Virus record (IMG/VR): IMGVR_UViG_3300044213_000107
Coordinates: 196,724 to 260,723 of that record
Reading direction: 5' to 3' (one strand)
DNA: 64,000 nucleotides
In this document: positions 25-19,772 of the stretch, piece by piece
How positions within the stretch are numbered: position 1 is the first letter of the stretch
Layout of the letters: each line of letters starts with the position of its first letter
The notes under the pieces: generated by a model
What the model was told of the DNA's origin: nothing
Databases searched by the model: none
What the model saw: only the letters and a program-made list of their open reading frames with translations
Position numbers and translations under genes: made by a program

Positions 25-100
25 TGGTGCCGCCTCTAGGTATCGAACCTAATTCTCTAGTGCTTCAAACTAGCGTGAGGACCTCCTTCACCAAAGCGGC
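25..100 (-). tRNA. tRNA-Phe(GAA)
   Basis: Cloverleaf, anticodon arm CTAGT-TTGAAGC-ACTAG, encoded CCA. Confidence 0.88.
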
Positions 101-103
101 ATA

Positions 104-178
104 TGGTCCGGCCACCAGGAATCGAACCTGGATTACAAGATTAGAAGTCTCGGGTATTATCCATTATACGATGGCCAG
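104..178 (-). tRNA. tRNA-Arg(UCU)
   Basis: Anticodon loop CTTCTAA, T-loop TTCGATT, CCA end. Confidence 0.9.
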
Positions 179-213
179 CGTCTGTAAAATGGTGCGCTCG
201 GAGGGACTTGAAC
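175..213 (-). repeat. 39-bp direct repeat copy 1 (T-loop to CCA of tRNA-Ile2 plus spacer; att-like)
   Basis: 37/39 identical to 2214-2252. Confidence 0.9.
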
Positions 214-248
214 ATTTTTATTATTCATTATACGAACGCTAGAGATTT

Positions 249-686
249 TTATAGTATAGCCGATAACCAATCAGTATACAATAAATTTTTATGTATTTTT
301 ATTTTCATTATCCCAGGAAAACTCATAAAGGAATGAGTCTTCCATACCTTGTTGCTTGTATCTTTGTACACAGATATTTTAGATATGCTATTGATAAAAT
401 CTATAGTATCCACTGTTAACCTTTCCAACACAATATATAAATCTTCAGTTATATCATTGTTGGAATCAATTTTTGTGTCTGTTAGTTCCTTATTAACAAA
501 TTCTATTGAAACACTGGTTAAATCAGAATTAACAGGAATATTATAATGATGTATTTCTTCTATATCATTTTTATGTTCAATCGCATATTCGTACACACAT
601 AATTTATTGTTTATAAAAATGTTATATACAGGTTTTTTAGTAGACGTTGAATGGAGTAGCAACGATAGGGATAACTTTTTTGTCAT
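249..686 (-). CDS. hypothetical protein, 145 aa
   Basis: ORF overlapping the end of the radical SAM gene, inside the repeat-flanked cassette. Confidence 0.7.
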   Translation of the reverse strand: MTKKLSLSLLLHSTSTKKPVYNIFINNKLCVYEYAIEHKNDIEEIHHYNIPVNSDLTSVSIEFVNKELTDTKIDSNNDITEDLYIVLERLTVDTIDFINSISKISVYKDTSNKVWKTHSFMSFPGIMKIKIHKNLLYTDWLSAIL

Positions 687-2169
687 TTTGCTTGTGCTCT
701 AAATATTTTTGCTCTAATCCTTCGATCTCTAATAATTTTTCATTTTGTCGGTTGATTTCAGAATAATACCCATATTCCTGCATTACTTCAACAAATCTTT
801 TCCATCTGTTTACTCTAACATCAAATGTATTGTTTACAAATTGTGTGCTAGTCCAGAAAAAATCGCCCCACTGGTCATGCCTATTATGTTCAAGACCGTA
901 TTCATCTGCATATCGTTGCATGAACCCGCTTCCATTTGTTAGCACCATTGGCAAAGATAAAAATACTTTTATCATATTGTTAGTTGTTAAGTGGGCATGA
1001 GTTTTAAGTAAATCGATACTTTGTTGGAAATCATCTTCCGTTTCGGTGGGATATCCTACAAACATTAACCATACTTGTTTTATACCTTTATCAAAACAAT
1101 TTTCAGCAAACCAAGTTATATCTTCATTACTGAATTTCTTCTTCATATCGTTACGAACTTTTTCACTACCCGACTCTATGCCTACTTTAAACAATTTCGC
1201 TCCGGCAGTTGATGCTAGTTTAAAATCTGATTCAGGCATGGATATTTTAGATCGACAAATGGCATAGCCAGAATATTCTATTCTATTGGGAATTTCTTCA
1301 GTTAATACCGTATTCATTAAACGATAATTTGTGATACTCCCATTCACAAGATTGTCAGTAAACTCAAACTTATTAATACCATATTTAGAATGTGTTTCGA
1401 TAATTTCACGTGCTATATCATTACCTTTTCTGTAGACGAATTTTGGCCAAGACGACTGCACATCGCAAAATGTACACTCTCTGACACATCCTTTACTGCC
1501 AGTAACCGGTATAGTTAAATTTTTATTTTTGTAACTTGGATACAATGAAAAATTATATCCTTCCCATGAAGGTGCAGGTGTGTTACTAAGTGCCTCTGCA
1601 GATACAGGAGGTGCAGTGTGTATTCCTTTTTTCTTATTTTGGATGACAGAAATCAAATCATTTTCCGCATCCCCACGATACACAGAATCTATCGGAAGAT
1701 AATCCATGAAATAATTAGCATAATTAATTCCACTGATTCGTTCGTTGTTATCTAGACCTCTGCCACCTATCATTATGTAACTGTTAGGCGATATCTCTCG
1801 AACTATAGTGGATAAAGGTACAACAAAATCTAAACTTTGGCTAGAAAATACAGACAATAAAATTGTATCCGGATTAAAATTTTTTATTTGTTGTTTAACA
1901 GCTTTTCTAAGCCATTTTAAAATTTTTAAAATATTAATGCTATTTGCCGGTCTGTACCCTCTTATGGCAAACATATCTACTATTATATTCCATTGATCTG
2001 CAAATTCGCTAAACAAATCAATATTTAGGTCCCAAACTTTACTATTGTATCCATTATGTTTTAAAATGCCGTTTATAACTGCAGGGCCGTATGGAACATC
2101 TCCGAAACTTTCTATTCCTGTATTAACAACTCTTACTGGAACTACTATTGTAAGGACATTTTTATTCAT
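637..2169 (-). CDS. B12-binding domain radical SAM protein (class B methyltransferase-like)
   Basis: CxxxCxxC motif (CVRECTFC), N-terminal PYGPAVI..IL cobalamin-binding-like region, GIESGSEKVR, GYPTETEDDF. Confidence 0.88.
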   Translation of the reverse strand: MNKNVLTIVVPVRVVNTGIESFGDVPYGPAVINGILKHNGYNSKVWDLNIDLFSEFADQWNIIVDMFAIRGYRPANSINILKILKWLRKAVKQQIKNFNPDTILLSVFSSQSLDFVVPLSTIVREISPNSYIMIGGRGLDNNERISGINYANYFMDYLPIDSVYRGDAENDLISVIQNKKKGIHTAPPVSAEALSNTPAPSWEGYNFSLYPSYKNKNLTIPVTGSKGCVRECTFCDVQSSWPKFVYRKGNDIAREIIETHSKYGINKFEFTDNLVNGSITNYRLMNTVLTEEIPNRIEYSGYAICRSKISMPESDFKLASTAGAKLFKVGIESGSEKVRNDMKKKFSNEDITWFAENCFDKGIKQVWLMFVGYPTETEDDFQQSIDLLKTHAHLTTNNMIKVFLSLPMVLTNGSGFMQRYADEYGLEHNRHDQWGDFFWTSTQFVNNTFDVRVNRWKRFVEVMQEYGYYSEINRQNEKLLEIEGLEQKYLEHKQNDKKVIPIVATPFNVY

Positions 2170-2213
2170 AGTAATATTTAGTAGACTAAACCAACCCAGT
2201 ATACTATCTTATA

Positions 2214-2252
2214 CCAGCATCTGTAAAATGGTGCGCTTGGAGGGACTTGAAC
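2214..2252 (-). repeat. 39-bp direct repeat copy 2
   Basis: Matches 175-213; includes the 3' end of the intact tRNA-Ile2. Confidence 0.9.
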
Positions 2253-2305
2253 CCCCGACCAAGCGATTATGAGTCGCCTGCTCTGACCAACTGAGCTACA
2301 AGCGC
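2229..2305 (-). tRNA. tRNA-Ile2(CAU), lysidine type
   Basis: Anticodon arm GGCGACTCATAATCGCTT as in enterobacterial ileX; CCA. Confidence 0.8.
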
Positions 2306-2311
2306 ATTAAC

Positions 2312-2397
2312 TGGTGCGACTGGCCGGAATCGAACCGGCACGGGAAAATCCCGGCAGATTTTAAGTCTGCTGCGGCTACCGATTACGCCACAGTCGC
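2312..2397 (-). tRNA. tRNA-Leu(UAA)
   Basis: Loop CTTAAAA, long variable arm, CCA. Confidence 0.92.
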
Positions 2398-2403
2398 TTA
2401 TCC

Positions 2404-2479
2404 TGGTGCCGGAGAAAGGAGTCGAACCCTCGACCTTCGCATTACAAGTGCGCTGCTCTACCAACTGAGCTACTCCGGC
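2404..2479 (-). tRNA. tRNA-Thr(UGU)
   Basis: Loop CTTGTAA, canonical D and T arms. Confidence 0.93.
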
Positions 2480-2489
2480 TAAAACTTTT

Positions 2490-2582
2490 TGGCGGAGCGG
2501 GAGGGATTCGAACCCTCGATACAGTTCATCACCGTATGACACCTTAGCAGGGTGCTGACTTCAGCCGCTCATCCACCGCTCC
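2490..2582 (-). tRNA. tRNA-Ser(GCU)
   Basis: Loop CTGCTAA, long variable arm, G discriminator. Confidence 0.92.
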
Positions 2583-2588
2583 AAATCC

Positions 2589-2664
2589 TGGTGGTCAGAA
2601 GAGCACTCGAAGCTCCACATTCATCCTTATGAGGGATGCTCTCTTCCTCTTAAGATATCTGACC
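2589..2664 (-). tRNA. tRNA-Met(CAU), probably elongator, atypical T-stem
   Basis: CATCC-CTCATAA-GGATG; T arm GGAGC-TTCGAGT-GCTCT. Confidence 0.8.
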
Positions 2665-2755
2665 ATATAAAAACACACTCTTATCAATATCCCAGCGGTC
2701 GACTCGGTTTAACAGGGCCCAACGTAGAGGGTCGGGCGAATGTGTTTTTATATGG
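2663..2755 (-). ncRNA. unassigned ~93-nt RNA closed by a 15-bp stem
   Basis: CCATATAAAAACACA ... TGTGTTTTTATATGG inverted repeat around a GC-rich core, between tRNA units. Confidence 0.55.
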
Positions 2756-2790
2756 TAGGAGCACGGGGATTTGAACCCTGAACCTATCAA
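2753..2790 (-). pseudogene. orphan tRNA 3' half (3' anticodon-stem strand, T arm, acceptor strand, CCA)
   Basis: Minus strand TTGATAGGTTCAGGGTTCAAATCCCCGTGCTCCTACCA; the HNH ORF lies where the 5' half would be. Confidence 0.75.
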
Positions 2791-3362
2791 TGACTGAGTA
2801 GTCGTTTTGCCCTGGCGTGGCTAGCACCCTTGTCAGGCAACCCAACACTTCTCAATGCTTCTGAAATAGTATTATGTTTCTTAACAGCCTCTAATAATAC
2901 TTCATCCGGAACAATTCTTTTTTTGTTATTTCTTCCTCGCCAAGTCTTAGTTTTTGAATGACAATTAGGACAAATACATTCTAAATTAGATCGGTCATTA
3001 TTTTTTGTATCACCGTCTTTATGCTCTAATTCTAAAACAATAGGATCACCCATCCATTCTGAAATTCCACAATGGTTACACTTATGACCTTGCTCTTCTA
3101 ATACCCGTCGCTTTCTATTCTCGCTACCTAATTTTTCAAAAGGTGTGGATTGGTATTTCTCTAATGCCCAAGCTGTTGTCTTGGCACTTCGTAATCTTAT
3201 TTCCTCGGTTGTAATTGGAGTTTTTCTAGTCCAACGACCGGCATTAGCAATACTTTTCTTCTTTTTGCTTTCTTCAGTAAACACTCTACTATTTGAACAT
3301 TTTCTAGAACAGAATGTTCCAGGCTTAGTATGTGCTGTATTACATTTAGGACAATTTTTCAT
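2787..3362 (-). CDS. HNH homing endonuclease with N-terminal Zn-finger
   Basis: CxxC..FCSRKC, then CNHC...LELEHKDGDTKNNDRSNLECICPNCH. Confidence 0.9.
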   Translation of the reverse strand: MKNCPKCNTAHTKPGTFCSRKCSNSRVFTEESKKKKSIANAGRWTRKTPITTEEIRLRSAKTTAWALEKYQSTPFEKLGSENRKRRVLEEQGHKCNHCGISEWMGDPIVLELEHKDGDTKNNDRSNLECICPNCHSKTKTWRGRNNKKRIVPDEVLLEAVKKHNTISEALRSVGLPDKGASHARAKRLLSH

Positions 3363-3365
3363 AAT

Positions 3366-3410
3366 ATTGAACTCTTACTTGTTATACTTTATTTATACTT
3401 AAAGTTCAAT
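3366..3410 (-). promoter_or_regulatory. late promoter TATAAATA inside an RBS-sequestering hairpin (HNH gene)
   Basis: ATTGAACT/AGTTCAAT arms flank TATAAATA at 3390-3397. Confidence 0.7.
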
Positions 3411-3426
3411 TTTATCAAAAATCAGT

Positions 3427-3500
3427 TGGTAGGCCCGGAGGGTACTGACCCCTCTTTTACGGATTAAAAGTCCGTTACTTCACCTTAAAGTTTCAAGCCC
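3427..3500 (-). tRNA. tRNA-Lys(UUU), non-canonical
   Basis: ACGGA-CTTTTAA-TCCGT; A8 instead of U8; T-loop GTCAGTA. Confidence 0.8.
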
Positions 3501-3505
3501 GTATG

Positions 3506-3580
3506 TGGTCCTTGCTCAGAGAATCGAACTCTGTTAGTCCGGGTAAGAGCCGGATACTTCGCCAGCAAAGTTTAGCAAGG
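3506..3580 (-). tRNA. tRNA-Lys(CUU)
   Basis: TCCGG-CTCTTAC-CCGGA; same A8 and ACTT/AAGT D-stem as its neighbour. Confidence 0.85.
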
Positions 3581-3589
3581 ATGGTTTGT

Positions 3590-3639
3590 ATTAACGAGTT
3601 CTTTAATGTCTTACAAACATATTAAAGAGTTCTTTAATG
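3590..3639. repeat. two 19-nt near-palindromic direct repeats
   Basis: ATTAACGAGTTCTTTAATG (3590-3608) and ATTAAAGAGTTCTTTAATG (3621-3639). Confidence 0.75.
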
Positions 3640-3676
3640 TGCCATCCCAGGACCAATACGGGGTCTTAGGATGACA

Positions 3677-3697
3677 CTACTGTTTACCTTGTTTCAT
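3677..3697 (-). CDS. six-codon leader ORF MKQGKQ
   Basis: AAAGGAA RBS, ATG AAA CAA GGT AAA CAG TAG, followed immediately by a 15-bp hairpin (3640-3676). Confidence 0.5.
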   Translation of the reverse strand: MKQGKQ

Positions 3698-3724
3698 GTC
3701 AAATTCCTTTGTGTTAAAAATGCT

Positions 3725-3753
3725 ATTATACAACTATCACAGCCAGTTGTCAA
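3725..3753 (-). promoter_or_regulatory. consensus sigma70 promoter
   Basis: TTGACA-N17-TATAAT. Confidence 0.85.
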
Positions 3754-3761
3754 CTGTTTTT

Positions 3762-3836
3762 TGGTACCCGGTGCTGGAATTGAACCAGCGACCCTTGCGT
3801 TATCAGCACAATGCTCTACCCCTGAGCTAACCGGGT
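3762..3836 (-). tRNA. tRNA-Ile(GAU)
   Basis: Loop CTGATAA. Confidence 0.92.
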
Positions 3837-3854
3837 ATTTTAATAAATATGTGT

Positions 3855-4034
3855 ATGATCTCTGAAGAAATTGAAAACTCTTGGAAATACTTGTATAGAT
3901 TCGTAGACGAATCCTACAAACCAAAATCATTTTGGTGTACACCCAGCGAGTTCAAACTTGAAGAACTGCCACAAATTGGTACCTCCGGAGAGACTCGAAC
4001 TCCCGACTCTTTCGTTCGTAGCGAAATACTCTAA
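3855..4034 (+). CDS. small hypothetical or remnant ORF running antisense into tRNA-Arg
   Basis: TAAATA-N5-ATG start; 3' third overlaps the tRNA. Confidence 0.35.
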   Translation: MISEEIENSWKYLYRFVDESYKPKSFWCTPSEFKLEELPQIGTSGETRTPDSFVRSEIL

Positions 4035-4053
4035 TCCACTGAGTTACGGAGGC
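3977..4053 (-). tRNA. tRNA-Arg(ACG)
   Basis: TTTCG-CTACGAA-CGAAA. Confidence 0.92.
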
Positions 4054-4056
4054 ATA

Positions 4057-4131
4057 TGGGGTGCGATACGAGAATCGAACTCGCGATAGCGGAATCACAA
4101 CCCGCGGTTTTGCCACTAAACTAATCACACC
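4057..4131 (-). tRNA. tRNA-His(GUG)
   Basis: Loop TTGTGAT, G-1:C73. Confidence 0.92.
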
Positions 4132-4165
4132 ATATCAATAAATACTTGCAGGTACCAAGATAAGT

Positions 4166-4744
4166 ATGGAACACAATTTAAATCTACAATATACACAAAT
4201 ACGTGATTATGTATTTGCATTATCTATACAATTTCCTTACTCCGACGAAGAAATTTTATCTGCAGCAAATACCGAGATTCTTGAACGATGGGTTGGTCCC
4301 GGTGATAGGTACCGAACAAATTCTCCACAATCTAAAATATTAAAAGATATATTTGAAATATTTAAAGATCCTGCGATATTTAAACAACAAATATTAGATA
4401 CGTTATACGCCACTGAAAAATACAAATATTTCTGGATTCGCAGCAAACAAGATTTGTTTACATCTTCAAGATTAAGTGTCGCACTCTACAAAGATTCTGC
4501 CAAATATTATTTAAAAAATCACCTGGATCCAAGAGACGTTATTGTATCAGGAATGTATTATCTCACAAAGTCAGATTTACAATATACAACAATCTACACT
4601 TCGGAAAATAATGATAATCCAATACAACTACTACCCAGTCAATACCAAGGTTGGATGTTAGCCAACACTGAAAATAGTTGGCACGATGGCAGAAATGAAG
4701 ATTCTGTTGATAGGATTGCCATTTATTATGATTTGTATCTATAA
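4166..4744 (+). CDS. 2OG-Fe(II) oxygenase family protein
   Basis: HxD (NHLD) ... SWHDG ... R facial-triad pattern. Confidence 0.7.
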   Translation: MEHNLNLQYTQIRDYVFALSIQFPYSDEEILSAANTEILERWVGPGDRYRTNSPQSKILKDIFEIFKDPAIFKQQILDTLYATEKYKYFWIRSKQDLFTSSRLSVALYKDSAKYYLKNHLDPRDVIVSGMYYLTKSDLQYTTIYTSENNDNPIQLLPSQYQGWMLANTENSWHDGRNEDSVDRIAIYYDLYL

Positions 4745-4746
4745 CT

Positions 4747-4820
4747 TGGCGACCCATGAAGGAATCGAACCTCCGTCCTTAGTTTTGGAGACTAGTACAC
4801 TACCATTGTGCTAATGGGCC
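4747..4820 (-). tRNA. tRNA-Trp(CCA)
   Basis: Loop CTCCAAA. Confidence 0.92.
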
Positions 4821-4824
4821 AAAT

Positions 4825-4910
4825 TGGTGGAAGTCCAGGGACTCGAACCCCGTATGCCGTAAGACGTCGGATTTACAGTCCGATGCAGTAACCTGTTCTG
4901 CTCGACTTCC
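4825..4910 (-). tRNA. tRNA-Tyr(GUA)
   Basis: Loop CTGTAAA, variable arm. Confidence 0.92.
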
Positions 4911-4916
4911 TTTATG

Positions 4917-5001
4917 TGGTGCGGATGGTGAGACTCGAACTCACACACCTTACGGTAATGGCTTCTAAGACCATCTCGGCTACCAGTTACGACACATCCG
5001 C
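4917..5001 (-). tRNA. tRNA-Leu(UAG)
   Basis: Loop CTTAGAA, variable arm. Confidence 0.92.
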
Positions 5002-5008
5002 AAAAACT

Positions 5009-5082
5009 TGGAGCGGGATAGGAGAATCGAACTCCTAACTAAACCTTGGCAAGGTTTCGTTTGACCATTAAACTAATCCCGC
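5009..5082 (-). tRNA. tRNA-Gly(GCC)
   Basis: AAACC-TTGCCAA-GGTTT, U discriminator. Confidence 0.92.
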
Positions 5083-5095
5083 AACTCCGAAAACA

Positions 5096-5171
5096 TGGCT
5101 GTCTAGGCAGGGATCGAACCTACGACAGGGTGATTAACAGTCACCTGCTCTACCAACTGAGCTACTAGACA
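5096..5171 (-). tRNA. tRNA-Asn(GUU)
   Basis: Loop CTGTTAA. Confidence 0.92.
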
Positions 5172-5183
5172 ATATTTATACTC

Positions 5184-5257
5184 TGGTGCCTCGTGACAGA
5201 ATCGAACTGCCGTCTGCACCGTGTAAGGATGCGGCCCTACCATTAGACGAACGAGGC
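5184..5257 (-). tRNA. tRNA-Val(UAC)
   Basis: Loop CTTACAC. Confidence 0.9.
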
Positions 5258-5329
5258 GAAATTTGGCGCCGATTTTTGTCATTTTAACTGAGGCTAACGA
5301 GCACTCCCTCAGATTAGTTGCAACTTATT

Positions 5330-5403
5330 TGGTGGAGAAGGAGAGAATCGAACTCTCAATTGAAGCTTGCAAAGCTACCGTTATCCCATTTAACTACATC
5401 CCC
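5330..5403 (-). tRNA. tRNA-Ala(UGC)
   Basis: Loop TTTGCAA, G3:U70. Confidence 0.88.
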
Positions 5404-5407
5404 AAAA

Positions 5408-5557
5408 TTATTCTTTAGTTTGTTCTTTGTGTTCTAGTAGTTTTTGTTGATATTGATCTTCAGTTAAACCATGCCAACCACAACACTTACCGTCTGGGCT
5501 ACGGCCACAACCGCATTTACCAATGTCTTCTGCATTTTCTTGTACTCTCATTTGCAT
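5408..5557 (-). CDS. 49-aa CDGSH-like (2Fe-2S or Zn) mini-protein, absent from the ORF track
   Basis: AAAGGAA RBS; MQMRVQENAEDIGKCGCGRSPDGKCCGWHGLTEDQYQQKLLEHKEQTKE. Confidence 0.7.
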   Translation of the reverse strand: MQMRVQENAEDIGKCGCGRSPDGKCCGWHGLTEDQYQQKLLEHKEQTKE

Positions 5558-5577
5558 GCATTTCCTTTATTAAAAAA

Positions 5578-5654
5578 TGGTCCGTGTGACACGATTCGAA
5601 CATGCGACCACCTGGTCCCAAACCAGGAGCTCTACCAGGCTGAGCTACACACGG
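5578..5654 (-). tRNA. tRNA-Pro(UGG)
   Basis: CCTGG-TTTGGGA-CCAGG. Confidence 0.92.
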
Positions 5655-5659
5655 AAAAC

Positions 5660-5734
5660 TGGATGCGGGAGACGGAATTGCACCGCCGATCTTCAGGTTA
5701 TGAGCCTGATGAGTTACTACTTCTCCATCCCGCG
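5660..5734 (-). tRNA. tRNA-fMet(CAU), initiator-like
   Basis: C1:A72 mismatch, loop CTCATAA. Confidence 0.8.
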
Positions 5735-5742
5735 ATAAACAA

Positions 5743-5816
5743 TGGTAAGGGAACTAGGAATCGAACCTAGAATAGCAGAATCAAAATCTGTTGTGATACC
5801 ATTTCACTATTCCCCA
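5743..5816 (-). tRNA. tRNA-Gln(UUG)
   Basis: Loop TTTTGAT. Confidence 0.88.
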
Positions 5817-5822
5817 ACGATG

Positions 5823-5898
5823 TGGTACTCGGTAGGGAATTCGAATCCCTGTTCACGCCGTGAAAGGGCGTTGTCCTAGGCCTCTAGACGAACCGAGC
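5823..5898 (-). tRNA. tRNA-Glu(UUC)
   Basis: ACGCC-CTTTCAC-GGCGT. Confidence 0.92.
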
Positions 5899-5907
5899 AT
5901 ACTTGTT

Positions 5908-5986
5908 TGGCGACTTGTAGGGGATTTGAACCCCTGATCTCTACCGTGACAGGGTAGCGCATTAAGCCAGACTATGCTAACAAGCC
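5908..5986 (-). tRNA. tRNA-Asp(GUC)
   Basis: CTACC-CTGTCAC-GGTAG. Confidence 0.92.
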
Positions 5987-5991
5987 AAATT

Positions 5992-6229
5992 CTCTATATG
6001 TAAACATACCTAAGGAACTCTTGAACAATATGGACTCTGCCGGCACCACGGGTTCGTCTCCCGATTGGGTTCATTCGTTATTACAGCCTACATGATCTGT
6101 CAGTACACTCGTACAGTATCTTGCGATCCGTAACTACCTTCATGTGCACTGCATACTCCGCCCCGGCGAGCTGTCCCCTTTGCAAGCACCTAACAGTATA
6201 GGTAACCTTTTGTACGTTTACATATAGAG
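5992..6229 (-). ncRNA. unassigned ~238-nt structured RNA
   Basis: 14-bp terminal stem CTCTATATGTAAAC/GTTTACATATAGAG, GC-rich interior, ATC-GCAA-GAT tetraloop hairpin. Confidence 0.6.
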
Positions 6230-6263
6230 GCTATTGTTTACAATAGCTTATATGTGATTAACT

Positions 6264-6433
6264 TTTTAAAGAACACAGTTAATTGCTTAACAAGCATGTA
6301 TTGTAACACCTTTTTGGACAATTAGCAAGTGTTTTTTACTGCTGTTGCTGATTTGCTACAACGTTTGTTCGATAACAAACTAGTTAATTTCTTAACTTGT
6401 ATCTATTATAGCACCAAATAATAACCCGCACAA
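6264..6433 (-). promoter_or_regulatory. tandem sigma70 promoters, each with a GNRA hairpin, then a boxA-like site
   Basis: TTGTGC-N17-TATAAT (6433-6405); TTGCTA-N17-TACAAT (6328-6300); GTTAA-GAAA/GCAA-TTAAC; TGTTCTTTAAAA (6275-6264). Confidence 0.7.
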
Positions 6434-6466
6434 TCTTCGGGTTTTGGGTGTTGTTTTTTAATAACA

Positions 6467-6489
6467 TGGAGTAGGTGACAGGACTTGAA
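6467..6489 (-). pseudogene. orphan tRNA 3' fragment (T-loop to UCCA)
   Basis: Minus strand TTCAAGTCCTGTCACCTACTCCA, truncated at the T-loop next to the HNH-like gene. Confidence 0.7.
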
Positions 6490-6524
6490 ATATATATTAT
6501 TTCGTTTTGAACATAAATAATAAC

Positions 6525-7310
6525 ATGAACACCTGTCAACAATGTACTTCATTATTTGCTCAAACTCCTGGAACGTACGGTAAATTTTGCTCTGTATCCT
6601 GTAGTAGTAAGTTTAATAATAAAATTAGACGCCAACAGACTACGGAAAACTATTTATTAAATCCAAAAGTTTGTAAAAATTGCAATTCAATCATAAATTA
6701 TTCTCAAAGAAAAAGTAATATTTTTTGTAGCCGATCCTGCGCCGCTGTGTTTAATAATGCCAAAAAAGATTGGACTAATATTAAAACTGGGCCGACACCT
6801 AAACAAAAGGCACCGAAATTAAAAAGAAAAGCGAGAACTAATACTATCCCAGATGCAGACGGACCATACACTATTATATACCTATGCACTTGCAAATTTA
6901 CTGGAAAAAAATGGTACTCCCCAACAGTTAAGACCATACACCCATCAACAATATCAACTAAAAAATTGTATTCTTATCAATGTAGATTTAACTTTGGTAT
7001 TAAGTCGTACCCTGAATGGTTTGCTTATGCATCAAATTTAATAAACACTAACGGCTGGTACTCAGCCTCTAATAGAGGTAATAATTTATCTGGATGTTCT
7101 CGTGATCATTTGTATTCAGTATCGGATGGATACAAAAACAATATAGATCCTAAAATAATATCTCATCCTGCAAACTGTGAGATAATTCCGCACAGGAAAA
7201 ATCAGAGTAAAAACAAGACTTCGTCGATTACATTAGAAGAACTAAAAGAAAGAATCAAAAAATTTAATCAAAAATATTTGGAGATGCCAGATGGGGTCGA
7301 GCCATCCTAG
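6525..7310 (+). CDS. Zn-finger repeat / HNH-like homing endonuclease
   Basis: Two CxxC..FCSxSC motifs; C-terminal SRDH...HPANCEIIPHRKNQSK; start moved to the ATG after TAAATA-N5. Confidence 0.75.
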   Translation: MNTCQQCTSLFAQTPGTYGKFCSVSCSSKFNNKIRRQQTTENYLLNPKVCKNCNSIINYSQRKSNIFCSRSCAAVFNNAKKDWTNIKTGPTPKQKAPKLKRKARTNTIPDADGPYTIIYLCTCKFTGKKWYSPTVKTIHPSTISTKKLYSYQCRFNFGIKSYPEWFAYASNLINTNGWYSASNRGNNLSGCSRDHLYSVSDGYKNNIDPKIISHPANCEIIPHRKNQSKNKTSSITLEELKERIKKFNQKYLEMPDGVEPS

Positions 7311-7352
7311 AAAGTTTTGCAGGCTTCCACCTAACCGCTCGGACATGGCATC
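7279..7352 (-). tRNA. tRNA-Cys(GCA), divergent T-loop
   Basis: Loop CTGCAAA, U discriminator; overlapped antisense by the HNH-like ORF end. Confidence 0.8.
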
Positions 7353-7402
7353 GTAATATAAAAATTTTAGTGTGGTAGTTCGGCGCACACCTACATAATA
7401 AA

Positions 7403-7495
7403 TGGTGGAAGCGGTGAGACTCGAACTCACACACCCTGTTGAGAGCCCTCAGTTTTCAAGACTGCTGCCGCTATGCCGATTCGGCTAACGCTTCC
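7403..7495 (-). tRNA. tRNA-Ser(UGA)
   Basis: Loop CTTGAAA, long variable arm. Confidence 0.9.
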
Positions 7496-7497
7496 AA

Positions 7498-8679
7498 TTA
7501 TACTGGGAATACTTCCCTAAAATTTGTTTTTCTTATACGATCTAACATACCAATATATTCGTTAAATGTATTGATTAAGTTAGGATTGTGCACAGCATTT
7601 TCCAATGAGTTTATTGTAAATTTAATCGCTGATATATAGTTATATCGCAGATAATGCGTTAAAGGAATCTGAGATTTTAGTTCTTGCAAATCGAGAATAA
7701 ATTGATTTCTTTGTGCATCTGTTAACACTTCTATGTCTAAATATGGTTTAGACATTAATCTACCAACATTCACAGCATATGAGTTATCAACACAATATTG
7801 AATTAATGGTATCAACGCCCAGAAACTTGTATACTGTAGTGTATGGCCAATGGTAATAGGATTATTAGGCCATGTAGGATTAGGACGTGTGGCTAATTTT
7901 TTAATATTAGCATCTACGGTTGCCCACTCACTACCATATCTAACATATTCTGTATGTTGCTCGGTACCTTCTAAACTTACAACTATTGCAACAGATTTAA
8001 ATTTTGAAATACAATCGTATACTTCATCTGTTAATGTTGTACCGTTTGTGGTAACTGTTAAATTTAATTGCTCCGGATGCGGAATGCTTTTTAACATTGC
8101 AATAGCATTAGGAGTTATAAGTGGCTCGCCACCTGTTAAAAAAATATGTTCAACATTTTCTAATAGTCGAGGCTCCAGCTCTTGATATTCATCTGTTTCA
8201 AACCAATTTCTTTTTTGTATAAATTGATCATCATGAGTTAAGTGAACAAAATTTTTATATTGTTCTCTATTCATTTTTACTTCAGTTTCTATACTAGAAC
8301 TGCAATAAGGATTACACATTATACATTTTAAATTACAGTGATTGCCAAATTCAACATGTAAATGTTTTATGCCATAAGATTTATCTGGTGAAAAATCTTG
8401 TCTAATAAAATTTTCAAATGTGCGATTACCATTTATTCTGTACGACGATGATCCATTGTCTTCTTCGTCCCAACAACGACTACAACCTTCATGTCTTTGG
8501 CCATTGTCTAGTTCTTGACTAATTTTAATAACTTTTGTTTGTCGCCAACGATCAAATTGATCATATTTATCAACCAAATTACCATCTTTTATTTGATAAT
8601 TACAACAAGGTGTAAGTGTGCCGTCTGTGCGAATATTAACACCAATATGCGAATGTATACAAAATGTTTCTTGATTCAT
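7498..8679 (-). CDS. radical SAM protein with N-terminal SPASM/twitch-like Cys cluster
   Basis: CNLKCIMC, TGGEPL, TTNGT; N-terminal C..PCC..CxxC; start moved to MNQETFC. Confidence 0.88.
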   Translation of the reverse strand: MNQETFCIHSHIGVNIRTDGTLTPCCNYQIKDGNLVDKYDQFDRWRQTKVIKISQELDNGQRHEGCSRCWDEEDNGSSSYRINGNRTFENFIRQDFSPDKSYGIKHLHVEFGNHCNLKCIMCNPYCSSSIETEVKMNREQYKNFVHLTHDDQFIQKRNWFETDEYQELEPRLLENVEHIFLTGGEPLITPNAIAMLKSIPHPEQLNLTVTTNGTTLTDEVYDCISKFKSVAIVVSLEGTEQHTEYVRYGSEWATVDANIKKLATRPNPTWPNNPITIGHTLQYTSFWALIPLIQYCVDNSYAVNVGRLMSKPYLDIEVLTDAQRNQFILDLQELKSQIPLTHYLRYNYISAIKFTINSLENAVHNPNLINTFNEYIGMLDRIRKTNFREVFPV

Positions 8680-8709
8680 AGTGATATTTATATGCAACAT
8701 ATATTGTAA

Positions 8710-8804
8710 TATTCTAAAACTGATTAGTTTCGGGAGATGTCCGTCCTATACAACCGGCCCTTTCAATGAGCCTGTAAAATATTCTTCTACTCAGTTTTAG
8801 AATA
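8710..8804 (-). ncRNA. unassigned ~95-nt RNA closed by a 14-bp stem
   Basis: TATTCTAAAACTGA ... TCAGTTTTAGAATA. Confidence 0.5.
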
Positions 8805-8812
8805 CCCTTTAT

Positions 8813-8943
8813 TGCTAGAGGATATGATAGGGTCAATACCCTACCCAGGAGTCTTACTAATCGGTTTCCGCCCGACGTTCATGTATCCTGTCCGCCCGTT
8901 TGTGCTAGTTAAAGTGAGCACGGGACCTCGTTTCCCTTGAGCA
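8813..8943 (-). ncRNA. unassigned multibranch structured RNA
   Basis: GC-rich island with nested helices CCCG-TGCT/AGCA-CGGG, CAGGA/TCCTG, TCGG/CCGA, TAGGGT/ACCCTA. Confidence 0.55.
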
Positions 8944-9307: not shown

Positions 9308-9336
9308 ATTGTAGTATATTTATCTTTATTCGTCAA
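9308..9336 (-). promoter_or_regulatory. sigma70 promoter with an embedded late TAAATA motif
   Basis: TTGACG-N17-TACAAT, 7 nt before the leader ATG. Confidence 0.8.
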
Positions 9337-18329: not shown

Positions 18330-19772
18330 TTATTTTTTACCCAGACCAGCTAGTGTTCGGATAAACGCCAAATCGTCAGATTCAGTAACAGGTTCATCCA
18401 TTCCGGTTGCACCAACTGTGTTGTTCTGCGGCGTTGCAGGTTGCGCAGGTGGTTGTTGCGGAGTTTGATTTACTTGTGTAAGTTCAGCATAGATCTCATC
18501 AGCGAGATCAGTCATACCGTTTGACTTCATCCATGCCAATACTGTTTGGCGTGTGTCAACGTCTGGACCAAAATCACTGCTTAATTTGGTTAGCGTACTT
18601 TCCATATCTGGATCTATATCGCTGAAGTAGAATTTTAATTCATTCCATGCATCCTGTCCATCTATACCGGCTGGCAACGGATGCTTCATTAATTCTTTAA
18701 AGTCTTCTTGTTTGTATTCATCTTCAATGTTTTCTAACACCGAAGTTTCGTTAACCCAGGATTCAAATTCTTTGCCCATTATTGGTTGAGAATCTTTGTA
18801 TTTTTTATATGCACGATATACATATGGCAGTGCCGCATCAAATTTATCATTGTAGACTTTTTTAACAAATCGTTCACGCAAACTAGGAATGTCAACGGAA
18901 TCTTCTACTGCAGCGTCAGGGACAAAATTTTCTGCATAGTGGCGATAGCCTTTGGGCCCACCAATGTGACGTAGACGATCGCGTAACTCACCATAGTGAT
19001 GTATAGCTGCATGAGCCATTTGTTGTGTTTCTGTGTCTTCAAATTGGCGACGTTTTGCTTCACGCACAAAATGTGCCATTGCCGACATTTCCATGCATAT
19101 TCCACTTATGCTTTCACCAATTGCATCATCAACTGATCCACCATTGCTACAATGTTGCGCCATTGCACGAGCACCGTGTAGGTTTTTAAACGGCAATAGT
19201 CTGCGTTCGCCGACATGATTTTCAATAAACACACTGTCGATATTACGACTACGTGCACCACGTTTTTCATCATCTACATTGGCGCTATGGCGAACAATAA
19301 TACGGGCAGGACCACATTCTTGATAACTGCTGCGACTTGTGCCCCACATACGACTTTCTGTAACTGCATCAACTTCGCCGGCGTCGAACGTACTGTCATG
19401 ACGACTTTGTTGTTTTACATCGCGTAGTTCTAAATTGCCTTTTGTGTTGTCTCTTACATCAAATCGCATCATGTTACTGCGAGCAAACTTTTTCATTGTA
19501 ATCAAAAATTTATTCCATTCTGCGGTTTCTTCAGCGTCTAAGTGTTCACCGATGTTTTTACCAAATAAAATTTTTAAACTTTCTTCATCAACAATACTAA
19601 TAGTTACATTACCAAATTTCTTTCCATTCTGACCAATGTAATCAAAATTAAAGAAACGTGCACGTGCAGGATCACTGGTTGCTTGTGATTTTTCGTCGCC
19701 TAAACTGACGTTTTCAAAGCGACTACGGATTTTATTAAATAGTTCTGTAGCTACGTTTTCGCTGTTTATCAT
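18330..19772 (-). CDS. hypothetical structural protein, 480 aa
   Basis: Upstream TAAATA; C-terminal IRTLAGL motif shared with the scaffold. Confidence 0.75.
   Translation of the reverse strand: MINSENVATELFNKIRSRFENVSLGDEKSQATSDPARARFFNFDYIGQNGKKFGNVTISIVDEESLKILFGKNIGEHLDAEETAEWNKFLITMKKFARSNMMRFDVRDNTKGNLELRDVKQQSRHDSTFDAGEVDAVTESRMWGTSRSSYQECGPARIIVRHSANVDDEKRGARSRNIDSVFIENHVGERRLLPFKNLHGARAMAQHCSNGGSVDDAIGESISGICMEMSAMAHFVREAKRRQFEDTETQQMAHAAIHHYGELRDRLRHIGGPKGYRHYAENFVPDAAVEDSVDIPSLRERFVKKVYNDKFDAALPYVYRAYKKYKDSQPIMGKEFESWVNETSVLENIEDEYKQEDFKELMKHPLPAGIDGQDAWNELKFYFSDIDPDMESTLTKLSSDFGPDVDTRQTVLAWMKSNGMTDLADEIYAELTQVNQTPQQPPAQPATPQNNTVGATGMDEPVTESDDLAFIRTLAGLGKK

What the first reader, a model, noticed from the sequence alone, without database searches (positions are those of the whole stretch)
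2663..8804. Three unrelated RNAs share one design: a 14-15 bp AT-rich closing stem
Elements at 2663-2755, 5992-6229 and 8710-8804 have different interiors, but each is closed by a perfect stem whose 5' arm looks alike (CCATATAAAAACAC, CTCTATATGTAAAC, TATTCTAAAACTGA; all contain TA..AAAC). Inference: a common processing or protein-binding handle, such as an RNase III substrate or a Ro60/Y-RNA-like stem, that lets different RNA cargos be released from the tRNA polycistron.
Basis: partly seen in the sequence, partly recalled or inferred. Interest (0 to 1): 0.6.

Follow-up and report, generated by a model that had tools for sequence, protein, structure and literature searches.

The report
Clamp helices around phage tRNA-array RNAs
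In the tRNA gene array of an uncultured jumbo phage, non-tRNA RNA inserts are closed by long A/U-rich "clamp" helices, and two of the three flagged stems belong to a clamp family found in at least 119 other phage contigs, where it encloses unrelated inserts; the clamp probably helps cut or insulate these inserts from the tRNA precursor, but its function is untested.

Summary
All three perfect stems exist. They are 3 of only 5 such inverted repeats in the 260-kb phage record, where about 0.25 are expected by chance. Folding and G·U bias place them on the minus strand, which carries the tRNAs.

E1 (2662-2756) and E2 (5992-6229) use the same clamp: 5' (C)CAUAU-NN-AAAC-ACAUU ... AGUGU-GUUU-NN-AUAUGG 3'. 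In relatives it starts at the encoded CCA of one tRNA and ends in the first Gs of the next.

A pattern for this clamp hit at least 119 IMG/VR contigs, all in tRNA arrays. The 35-63-nt interiors are essentially unrelated.

E2's interior is a new conserved RNA of about 200 nt. It has 9 homologs and 16 covarying pairs. One homolog has its own promoter and no clamp.

E3 (8710-8804) is different. It is the 3' domain of a conserved RNA of about 235 nt, and its stem is not this clamp.

No Ro60/TROVE, RNase III, RtcB or Rnl2 gene was found, and no Rfam family matches.

The most likely role is a processing or insulation helix, possibly cut by host RNase III, but cleavage was not tested. This looks like a new variant of a known kind.

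The parts
2662..2756 (-). E1: an 18-bp A/U-rich clamp (5' CCAUAUAAAAACACAUUC ... GAGUGUGUUUUUAUAUGG 3') enclosing a 57-nt two-hairpin interior. The 5' arm starts with the CCA of a tRNA-Lys remnant. The 3' arm ends in G+1/G+2 of tRNA-Met (2589-2664).
   Evidence: (minus strand -39.5 kcal/mol, z -6.9; plus strand -29.0, z -3.5). Homologs L012:19957-20039 and two in L074.
5992..6229 (-). E2: an 18-bp clamp (CUCUAUAUGUAAACGUAC / GUAUGUUUACAUAUAGAG) enclosing a conserved structured RNA of about 200 nt. It lies 5 nt upstream of tRNA-Asp (5908-5986).
   Evidence: minus -81.3, plus -66.7 kcal/mol; 93.6% of cells paired; 16 pairs changed on both sides; 0 of 500 shuffles as good.
8710..8804 (-). E3: a 14-bp perfect stem that closes the 3' domain of a larger conserved RNA. 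It is not the E1/E2 clamp.
   Evidence: L226:7414-7503 has an identical stem and a homologous interior.
8700..8935 (-). Full E3-containing non-coding RNA of about 235 nt. It lies between a 49-codon ORF and the radical-SAM ORF. The homolog in L226 is followed by tRNA-Ser(UGA) with no ORF in between.
   Evidence: 84% column identity with L226:7255-7520; fold.
2757..2800 (-). 3' remnant (T arm, 3' acceptor strand, CCA) of a tRNA-Lys(UUU) gene. It supplies the CCA of the E1 clamp and is overlapped by the end of an HNH ORF (2787-3362).
   Evidence: aligns with tRNA-Lys(UUU) of L012 and L162; HNH.
2589..2664 (-). tRNA-Met. Its first two or three nucleotides are the last pairs of the E1 clamp.
5908..5986 (-). 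tRNA-Asp, the first tRNA after E2.
6300..6328 (-). Promoter-like site TTGCTA-17-(TG)TACAAT, about 70 nt upstream of E2. A similar TTGACA-17-(TG)CTACAAT precedes E2 in L086.
   Evidence: consensus match only.
9308..9336 (-). Promoter-like site TTGACG-17-TACAAT upstream of the small ORF and the E3 RNA.
   Evidence: consensus match only.

Best explanation
E1 and E2 are RNA inserts in the phage's minus-strand tRNA transcript. Each is closed by a member of a conserved family of A/U-rich clamp helices, usually 17-20 bp long.

In the canonical arrangement the clamp pairs N73-CCA plus the next 14 or so nucleotides after one tRNA with the 14 or so leader nucleotides plus U(-1)G(+1)G(+2) of the next tRNA. 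The insert is thereby looped out as a separate folding unit.

I infer that the clamp is a processing and insulation module. It keeps the insert from interfering with tRNA folding, and it offers a double-stranded cleavage site, most simply for host RNase III. After that cut, 3' exonucleases would trim back to CCA and RNase P would cut at G+1, releasing both tRNAs and the insert.

The interior can be a functional RNA, as in E2, or a fast-changing filler, as in most E1-type elements. E3 is a separate conserved RNA whose internal helix merely looks similar.

Shown: that the helices exist, their strand, conservation, covariation and exact position against the tRNA ends. Inferred: cleavage and release.
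For: 1. The stems are far from chance and are clustered.

2. They act on the RNA of the tRNA strand.
- All three fold better on the minus strand.
- In 81 closing helices chosen without regard to strand, non-Watson-Crick positions are G.U 98 against A.C 43. In non-canonical clamps the split is 44 against 11.
- Interiors that recur always recur in the same orientation: 18 same, 0 inverted.

3. They are conserved with compensatory change.
- E1 and E2 stems in L012, L074, L086 and L093 show AA/UU to UG/CA, U-A to C-G and G-C to U-A.
- Many other inter-tRNA spacers carry helices of different sequence but the same layout, for example ACCAUUUGUUUUGCUGACGUA / UGCGUCAGCAAAACAAAUGGU.

4. The layout is general in this phage group. 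Among 202 unique 40-120-nt inter-tRNA spacers, 57 have a terminal helix of at least 12 bp, against 4 in shuffled spacers. Among 213 spacers of 121-400 nt the counts are 29 against 3.
- 70 of 81 helices start at N73 or C74 of the upstream tRNA. 46 of 81 end at +2 or +3 of the next tRNA. Median length is 20 bp and A+T is 71%.
- 97% of the array tRNAs encode CCA.

5. The cargo does not depend on the clamp.
- 91 canonical elements fall into 61 interior clusters at 65% identity. Interior identity is near random (0.40 against 0.32 for shuffles) even where both 60-nt flanks are 80-90% identical.
- The same interior sits between different tRNA pairs, for example L128 and L161.
- E2 occurs with the clamp in 9 contexts and without it behind its own promoter in L089.
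- A canonical clamp also directly follows GOLLD RNA in L093.

6. Precedent: the T4 tRNA transcript also carries two stable RNAs and a homing-endonuclease gene (PMC2330249).
Against: - There are no expression or end-mapping data.
- No phage RNase III gene was found in this record or in 18 clamp-bearing records, and the host is unknown.
- RNase III needs little sequence specificity, so it does not by itself explain why the canonical clamp sequence recurs. Nor does it explain the frequent A.C mismatch at position 8 (46 of 86) or the U.G at position 16 (65 of 86).
- About half of same-strand tRNA neighbours (590 of 1287 gaps) are separated by 15 nt or less with no clamp, so clamps are not needed for tRNA release as such.
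- E1-type interiors fold no better than shuffles (mean z -0.4), so many may carry no cargo function at all.
- Part of the clamp's apparent invariance was imposed by my search pattern. Only positions 7, 8, 11 (3' arm), 14, 16 and 17 were free.
- Relatedness among contigs inflates all counts.
Confidence: 0.5

Rival explanations
1. End-protection clamp. The insert is freed by the ordinary tRNA enzymes: RNase P at the downstream G+1 and 3' maturation of the upstream tRNA. The helix stays in the mature RNA and hides both ends from exonucleases and from 5'-end-dependent RNase E. The A.C and U.G irregularities keep RNase III from cutting it.
For: - The helix begins and ends exactly at the tRNA boundaries, as expected if tRNA enzymes define the ends.
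- Non-Watson-Crick positions in the canonical clamp are conserved.
- No RNase III gene is present.
Against: - A leader locked in a 17-bp helix should be a poor RNase P substrate (general knowledge, not tested here).
- E2 in L089 lacks the clamp.
- Most E1-type interiors look like filler with nothing worth protecting.
- The window's own three stems are perfect duplexes without irregularities.
Confidence: 0.2
2. Sequence-specific handle. The canonical clamp is the binding or cleavage site of a dedicated phage or host protein, such as an endoribonuclease, chaperone or modification factor. The interiors diversify under selection, for example as decoys or sponges.
For: - The same 17-bp sequence recurs in at least 119 contigs from phages of 160 to 400 kb, around unrelated interiors.
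- The A.C mismatch at position 8 is conserved.
- The clamp is strongly associated with tRNA-Lys(UUU): 29 of 48 junctions, odds ratio 23.6.
Against: - The pattern search imposed much of the sequence identity.
- Non-canonical clamps with quite different sequences occupy the same layout, so structure rather than sequence is the common denominator.
- No candidate protein was identified: TROVE, RNase III, RtcB and Rnl2 are absent.
- The interiors share no motif.
Confidence: 0.15
3. DNA-level element. The inverted repeats are ends of a miniature mobile element, or recombination sites that shuffle tRNA genes and inserts. They might also be targets of the HNH homing endonucleases in the array.
For: - The same clamp plus interior is found between different tRNA neighbours.
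- Interiors are replaced between closely related flanks.
- An HNH ORF and a broken tRNA-Lys gene abut E1 in the window.
Against: - G.U outnumbers A.C 4:1 in non-canonical clamps.
- There are no inverted interiors.
- There are only 1-3 clamps per locus and no shared interior, unlike MITEs.
- The repeat includes the functional CCA and G+1/G+2 of tRNAs.
- HNH homologs in other arrays are not next to clamps.
Confidence: 0.1

Closest known systems
RNase III processing stems that flank 16S and 23S rRNA in bacterial rRNA operons, and phage T7 early-mRNA RNase III sites (from general knowledge)
   Same: A long duplex is formed by sequences on both sides of an RNA inside a polycistronic stable-RNA transcript. 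Its length is near two helical turns (median 20 bp).
   Different: Here the duplex is built from a tRNA's CCA trailer and the next tRNA's leader. It is A/U-rich, it encloses short and mostly non-conserved inserts, and cleavage has not been shown.
Phage T4 tRNA operon with stable species 1 and 2 RNAs (rnaC, rnaD) and segB (PMC2330249; NC_000866 annotation)
   Same: Non-tRNA stable RNAs and a homing-endonuclease gene are co-transcribed within a phage tRNA cluster.
   Different: T4 rnaC and rnaD have no long terminal clamp in their predicted folds and no detected sequence similarity: neither the distant DNA searches of the phage collection nor the spacer survey of the T4 array gave a match. T4 has no inter-tRNA spacer of 40 nt or more with such a helix.
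GOLLD and ROOL large RNAs of phage tRNA islands (RF02032; PMC12286853)
   Same: These are structured non-coding RNAs embedded in phage tRNA arrays. GOLLD is present in three relatives, about 550 nt downstream of E2 in two of them, and is directly followed by a canonical clamp.
   Different: The window and its 260-kb record have no GOLLD match. E1, E2 and E3 match no Rfam family. The clamp is a short helix, not an ornate RNA.
Bacterial and phage Y RNAs (YrlA, RF02553; PMC4201824)
   Same: E1 is about 95 nt with a long terminal stem and an internal multiloop. A few clamp interiors elsewhere carry a T-arm-like hairpin (L098, L131, L134, L156).
   Different: There is no Ro60/TROVE gene, no YrlA covariance-model match on the elements, and no GNCGAAN0-1G motif in the stem.
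Engineered polycistronic tRNA-guide RNA arrays (from general knowledge)
   Same: A cargo RNA is placed exactly between two tRNAs so that tRNA-processing enzymes can define its ends.
   Different: This is a natural arrangement, and it has an added clamp helix that engineered arrays lack.

Membership tests
Y RNA / YrlA | Encoded within a few kb of a Ro60 (TROVE) gene on the same strand | tested here: not met
   PF05731 is absent from the 260-kb record and from 18 clamp-bearing phage records, 8 of them at least 90% complete. The control genomes gave matches.
Y RNA / YrlA | Match to the YrlA covariance model (RF02553, gathering score 69 bits) | tested here: not met
   There is no match on E1, E2 or E3. 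The only hits are 24-26 bits and lie over pairs of ordinary tRNAs.
Y RNA / YrlA | GNCGAAN0-1G (Ro60/Rsr contact) in the 5' strand of the terminal stem | tested here: not met
   The clamp 5' arms CCAUAUAAAAACACAUU, CUCUAUAUGUAAACGUAC and UAUUCUAAAACUGA lack it. The motif definition is from PMC4201824. A GACGAAG string does occur inside the E2 relatives, but it is internal, not in the stem, and it reads AACGAAU in the window.
Y RNA / YrlA | tRNA-like domain (T and D arms) | tested here: inconclusive
   It is absent from the window's E1. T-arm-like hairpins occur in about 4 of 86 clamp interiors elsewhere.
RNase III processing stem | Duplex of roughly two helical turns flanking an RNA in a polycistronic precursor | tested here: met
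   Window clamps are 14-18 bp. Across 81 spacers the median is 20 bp and the range 16-26. The context is an array of same-strand tRNAs.
RNase III processing stem | Staggered double-strand cleavage by RNase III in vivo or in vitro | not testable with these tools
MITE-like mobile element | Terminal inverted repeats around a conserved interior, many copies, either orientation | tested here: not met
   There are 1-3 clamps per locus. The interiors fall into 61 clusters among 91 elements. None of 18 recurring interiors is inverted. G.U bias fits RNA pairing.
T4 species 1 and 2 RNAs | Sequence or structure homology to rnaC/rnaD | tested here: not met
   Distant DNA searches of the phage collection found nothing. 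The T4 RNAs fold without a long terminal clamp.
GOLLD RNA | Match to RF02032 | tested here: not met
   There is none in the window or the record. It is present in relatives L085, L086 and L093.
Intrinsic terminator | G+C-rich hairpin followed by a U tract | tested here: not met
   The stems are A/U-rich and are followed by tRNA 5' ends or a spacer. The scan lists no terminator at these sites.

The most novel reading that the evidence does not exclude
The canonical clamp (CCAUAU-NN-AAACACAUU / AGUGUGUUU-NN-AUAUGG, often with an A.C mismatch at position 8) could be a sequence-specific, portable handle read by a dedicated but still unidentified phage or host factor. Phage tRNA arrays would then double as plug-in expression platforms for fast-evolving small RNAs, possibly decoys or sponges used against host defences. 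The strong link to tRNA-Lys(UUU) might reflect a role in countering anticodon nucleases.
Probability: 0.15. Interest if true: 0.8.

Novelty: new variant of a known kind. Interest (0 to 1): 0.62.

Why it matters
Phage tRNA arrays are usually read as lists of tRNAs, and the spacers are ignored.

Here a sizeable fraction of the longer spacers in a large, uncultured group of jumbo phages follows one architectural rule: a clamp built from the CCA end of one tRNA and the leader of the next. One clamp sequence recurs in at least 119 contigs around unrelated interiors.

This gives three things:
- a simple, testable model for how non-tRNA RNAs are expressed and excised from tRNA precursors, including a new RNA of about 200 nt (E2), one of about 235 nt (E3 RNA), and perhaps GOLLD;
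- a search handle for finding further phage non-coding RNAs;
- a natural counterpart to engineered tRNA-flanked RNA arrays.

If the clamp turns out to be protein-specific, it would also point to an unknown RNA-processing factor.

Tried and rejected
- **Rfam.** Gathering and E-value searches on the window and on relatives gave no family for E1, E2 or E3.
- **Candidate proteins.** TROVE, RNase III, RtcB and Rnl2-type ligase are absent from this record. TROVE and RNase III are also absent from 18 clamp-bearing records.
- **Cultured phages, by similarity.** Near and distant DNA searches found no homolog of any element.
- **Cultured phages, by survey.** Five cultured relatives identified by the SSB protein (Phosso, PA5oct, XaC1, Vibrio 2.275.O, fHe-Yen9-04) lack the canonical arm. 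In the spacer survey of those five plus T4, only Phosso has any closing helix: 2 of its 19 spacers of 40-400 nt, and neither starts at the CCA itself.
- **T4 species 1 and 2 RNAs.** They have no terminal clamp.
- **E2 in cellular genomes.** There were four matches, all chance hits in coding sequence.
- **Searches through neighbouring proteins.** The radical-SAM protein gave only relatives at 25% identity. ORF 4166-4744 gave none.
- **Mobile-element reading.** There are no inverted interiors, and HNH genes are not consistently next to clamps.
- **Shared motif in E1-type interiors.** None is convincing. The interiors fold no better than shuffles.
- **tRNA with intron, or tmRNA, at 2756-2835.** ARAGORN with introns found nothing. 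The stretch is a tRNA-Lys 3' remnant.
- **Literature.** Six searches found no description of such clamps.

Full report
**Setting**

The window is the last 64 kb of a 260,723-bp IMG/VR virus record that is about 74% complete. It encodes a UvsX-like recombinase and a gp32-like SSB. By that SSB, the nearest cultured phages are Rak2/PA5oct-like jumbo phages: Sinorhizobium phage Phosso at 59% and PA5oct at 54%. Positions 25-7495 carry 24-26 tRNA genes, all on the minus strand. Among them are two radical-SAM ORFs, an HNH ORF and an HNH-like ORF. The three flagged elements lie in non-coding stretches of this region.

**The observation**

All three perfect inverted repeats are present. In the whole record only five perfect inverted repeats of at least 14 bp with a 30-400-nt loop exist. 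Twenty Markov shuffles gave a mean of 0.25. Three of the five are the flagged ones, within 6 kb.

Each element folds more stably as minus-strand RNA:
- E1: -39.5 against -29.0 kcal/mol
- E2: -81.3 against -66.7 kcal/mol
- E3: -28.7 against -24.1 kcal/mol

On the minus strand G.U pairs extend the E1 and E2 helices to 18 bp.

E1 occupies exactly the gap between a tRNA-like 3' end and tRNA-Met. Its 5' arm begins with the encoded CCA, and its 3' arm ends with the first Gs of tRNA-Met. E2 lies 5 nt upstream of tRNA-Asp and about 70 nt downstream of a promoter-like site. E3 lies upstream of a radical-SAM ORF.

**Relatives**

No known RNA family matches, and cultured phages hold no homolog. The SSB protein retrieved 80 related IMG/VR loci. 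nhmmer then found E2 and E1 homologs in L012 and an E1-like element in L074. Both stems are kept there through compensatory changes.

*E2.* A motif from the E2 interior retrieved nine contigs.
- In seven, E2 sits between tRNA-Leu(UAG) and tRNA-Tyr. Its closing helix, CACCAUAUUAAAAUGUAUU / AGUAUGUUUUAAUAUGGAG, includes the CCA of the first tRNA and the GG of the second.
- L086 has a promoter upstream and a covarying clamp.
- L089 has its own TTGACA-17-TATAAT promoter and only the inner core, with no A/U-rich clamp.
- The consensus structure has 61 pairs and 93.6% of cells paired. Sixteen pairs changed on both sides, and none of 500 shuffles matched this.
- A scan of 185,579 prokaryote genomes gave only chance hits in coding sequence.

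E2 is therefore a new, phage-borne structured RNA of about 200 nt.

Every delivered locus with tRNA calls is a tRNA array.
- Eighty-six distinct elements share 5' CCAUAU-NN-AAACACAUU ... AGUGUGUUU-NN-AUAUGG 3'.
- At positions the pattern left free, position 7 covaries (A-U, U-A or G-C). Position 8 is often A.C (46 of 86) or G-C (21). Position 16 is mostly U.G (65), and position 17 is U-A (82).
- The CCA is usually the 3' end of the upstream tRNA, and GG is usually the start of the next.
- The interiors are 35-63 nt long, have 50% G+C against 40.5% for the loci, and fall into 61 clusters at 65% identity.
- Where both 60-nt flanks are 80-90% identical, interior identity is 0.40, against 0.32 for shuffled sequence.
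- The interiors share no motif and fold no better than shuffles.
- E2's clamp in relatives matches the E1 consensus at 14 of 17 and 15 of 17 positions. The window's E2 arm (AUAUGUAAAC) equals the arm variant seen in L106.

E1 and E2 therefore use one clamp family.

*E3.* A scan for the E3 stem found one contig, L226. There the stem, its interior and about 140 nt upstream are all homologous (84% column identity), and tRNA-Ser(UGA) follows. E3 is thus the 3' domain of a conserved RNA of about 235 nt. It is not a clamp with an exchangeable interior.

**A general rule**

I surveyed every inter-tRNA spacer in 97 loci holding 1,384 tRNAs, 97% of which encode CCA.
- Of 202 unique spacers of 40-120 nt, 57 have a terminal helix of at least 12 bp. 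Shuffled spacers gave 4.
- Of 213 spacers of 121-400 nt, 29 have one, against 3 in shuffles.
- Many of these helices have quite different sequences but still run from (N)CCA to UGG(N).

With strand-neutral selection there are 81 helices:
- Median length is 20 bp (range 16-26), and A+T is 71%.
- 70 start at N73 or C74 of the upstream tRNA, and 46 end at +2 or +3 of the next.
- G.U outnumbers A.C 98 to 43 overall and 44 to 11 in non-canonical clamps.

No interior recurs in inverted orientation. tRNA-Lys(UUU) is followed by a clamp in 29 of 48 junctions, an odds ratio of 23.6. Because the contigs are related, these counts are not independent events.

Among five cultured relatives and T4, only Phosso shows any closing helix: 2 of its 19 spacers of 40-400 nt. 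Neither starts at the CCA itself.

**Mechanism**

The data show an RNA-level helix on the tRNA strand. It is under selection for pairing, sits exactly against the tRNA ends, does not depend on what it encloses, and is dispensable when the cargo has its own promoter.

From this I infer a processing and insulation module. The simplest enzyme is host RNase III, followed by 3' trimming and RNase P cleavage.

None of this was tested. No phage RNase III, RtcB or Rnl2 gene, and no TROVE gene, was found.

The rivals are an end-protecting clamp kept in the mature RNA, a sequence-specific protein handle, and a DNA-level recombination or mobility element. The last is disfavoured by the G.U bias, the constant orientation and the low copy number.

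**Comparison with known systems**

The closest analogues are RNase III stems of rRNA operons and the T4 tRNA operon with its species 1 and 2 RNAs and segB (PMC2330249). The T4 RNAs have no such clamp.

GOLLD, a known RNA of phage tRNA islands (PMC12286853), occurs in three relatives. In one of them, L093, it is directly followed by a canonical clamp. It is absent from this record.

The Y RNA reading fails on Ro60 adjacency, on the covariance model and on the stem motif (PMC4201824).

**Verdict**

I found no description of such clamps in six literature searches.

Noticed in passing
window 2756-3503 (minus strand): An HNH endonuclease ORF (2787-3362) sits between an intact but odd tRNA-Lys(UUU) (3430-3500; Rfam 44 bits, missed by ARAGORN) and a 3' remnant of a second tRNA-Lys(UUU) gene (about 2757-2800) that is fused to E1. 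This looks like a homing-endonuclease insertion that split or duplicated the tRNA-Lys gene.
   Followed up: partly
window 3581-3753 (minus strand); L012:19700-19796: A perfect TTGACA-17-TATAAT promoter (3725-3753) is followed by a conserved six-codon mini-ORF (MKQGKQ* here, MKRGKL* in L012) with two AAA lysine codons. A conserved hairpin comes next, just upstream of the tRNA-Lys(CUU) and tRNA-Lys(UUU) genes. It could be a leader-peptide-type control element.
   Followed up: partly
L085:1132-1594, L086:407-872, L093:999-1464 (minus strands): GOLLD RNA (RF02032, 196-220 bits) is present in three related phage tRNA arrays. In L086 and L093 it lies about 550 nt downstream of E2. In L093 the GOLLD 3' end (...CCUCCACCA) runs straight into a canonical clamp, and a second clamp follows in tandem.
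   Followed up: partly
window 8700-8935 (minus strand); L226:7270-7510: A conserved structured RNA of about 235 nt (the E3 RNA) has no Rfam match. In L226 it is followed by tRNA-Ser(UGA). In the window a radical-SAM/SPASM ORF (7498-8700) lies between it and tRNA-Ser(UGA).
   Followed up: partly
window 637-2169 and 7498-8700 (minus strand): Two radical-SAM enzymes, one with a weak, sub-threshold match to a B12-binding domain and one with a weak, sub-threshold SPASM match, are embedded in the tRNA region.
   Followed up: no
L226:493-568: A tRNA with a CUA anticodon (ARAGORN calls it 'Pyl') occurs in a related phage contig. It looks like an amber suppressor.
   Followed up: no
L074:9636-9827: A group I intron (Rfam 68 bits) lies beside tRNA-Met in a related tRNA array.
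   Followed up: no
L012:19096-19414 and 19493-19700: Two further long, G+C-rich non-coding stretches lie between tRNAs. One contains a T-arm-like GGGUUCAACUCCC. Neither matches Rfam.
   Followed up: no
Loci L097, L121, L125, L142, L164, L165 (inter-tRNA spacers): A second recurring spacer motif, CCAA-GUUUUGUAAGUG ... UACUUACAAAUU, and a third, UUAGGAUAGCAAC ... GAUGCUAUCCUG, recur between different tRNA pairs. They may be further spacer element families.
   Followed up: no
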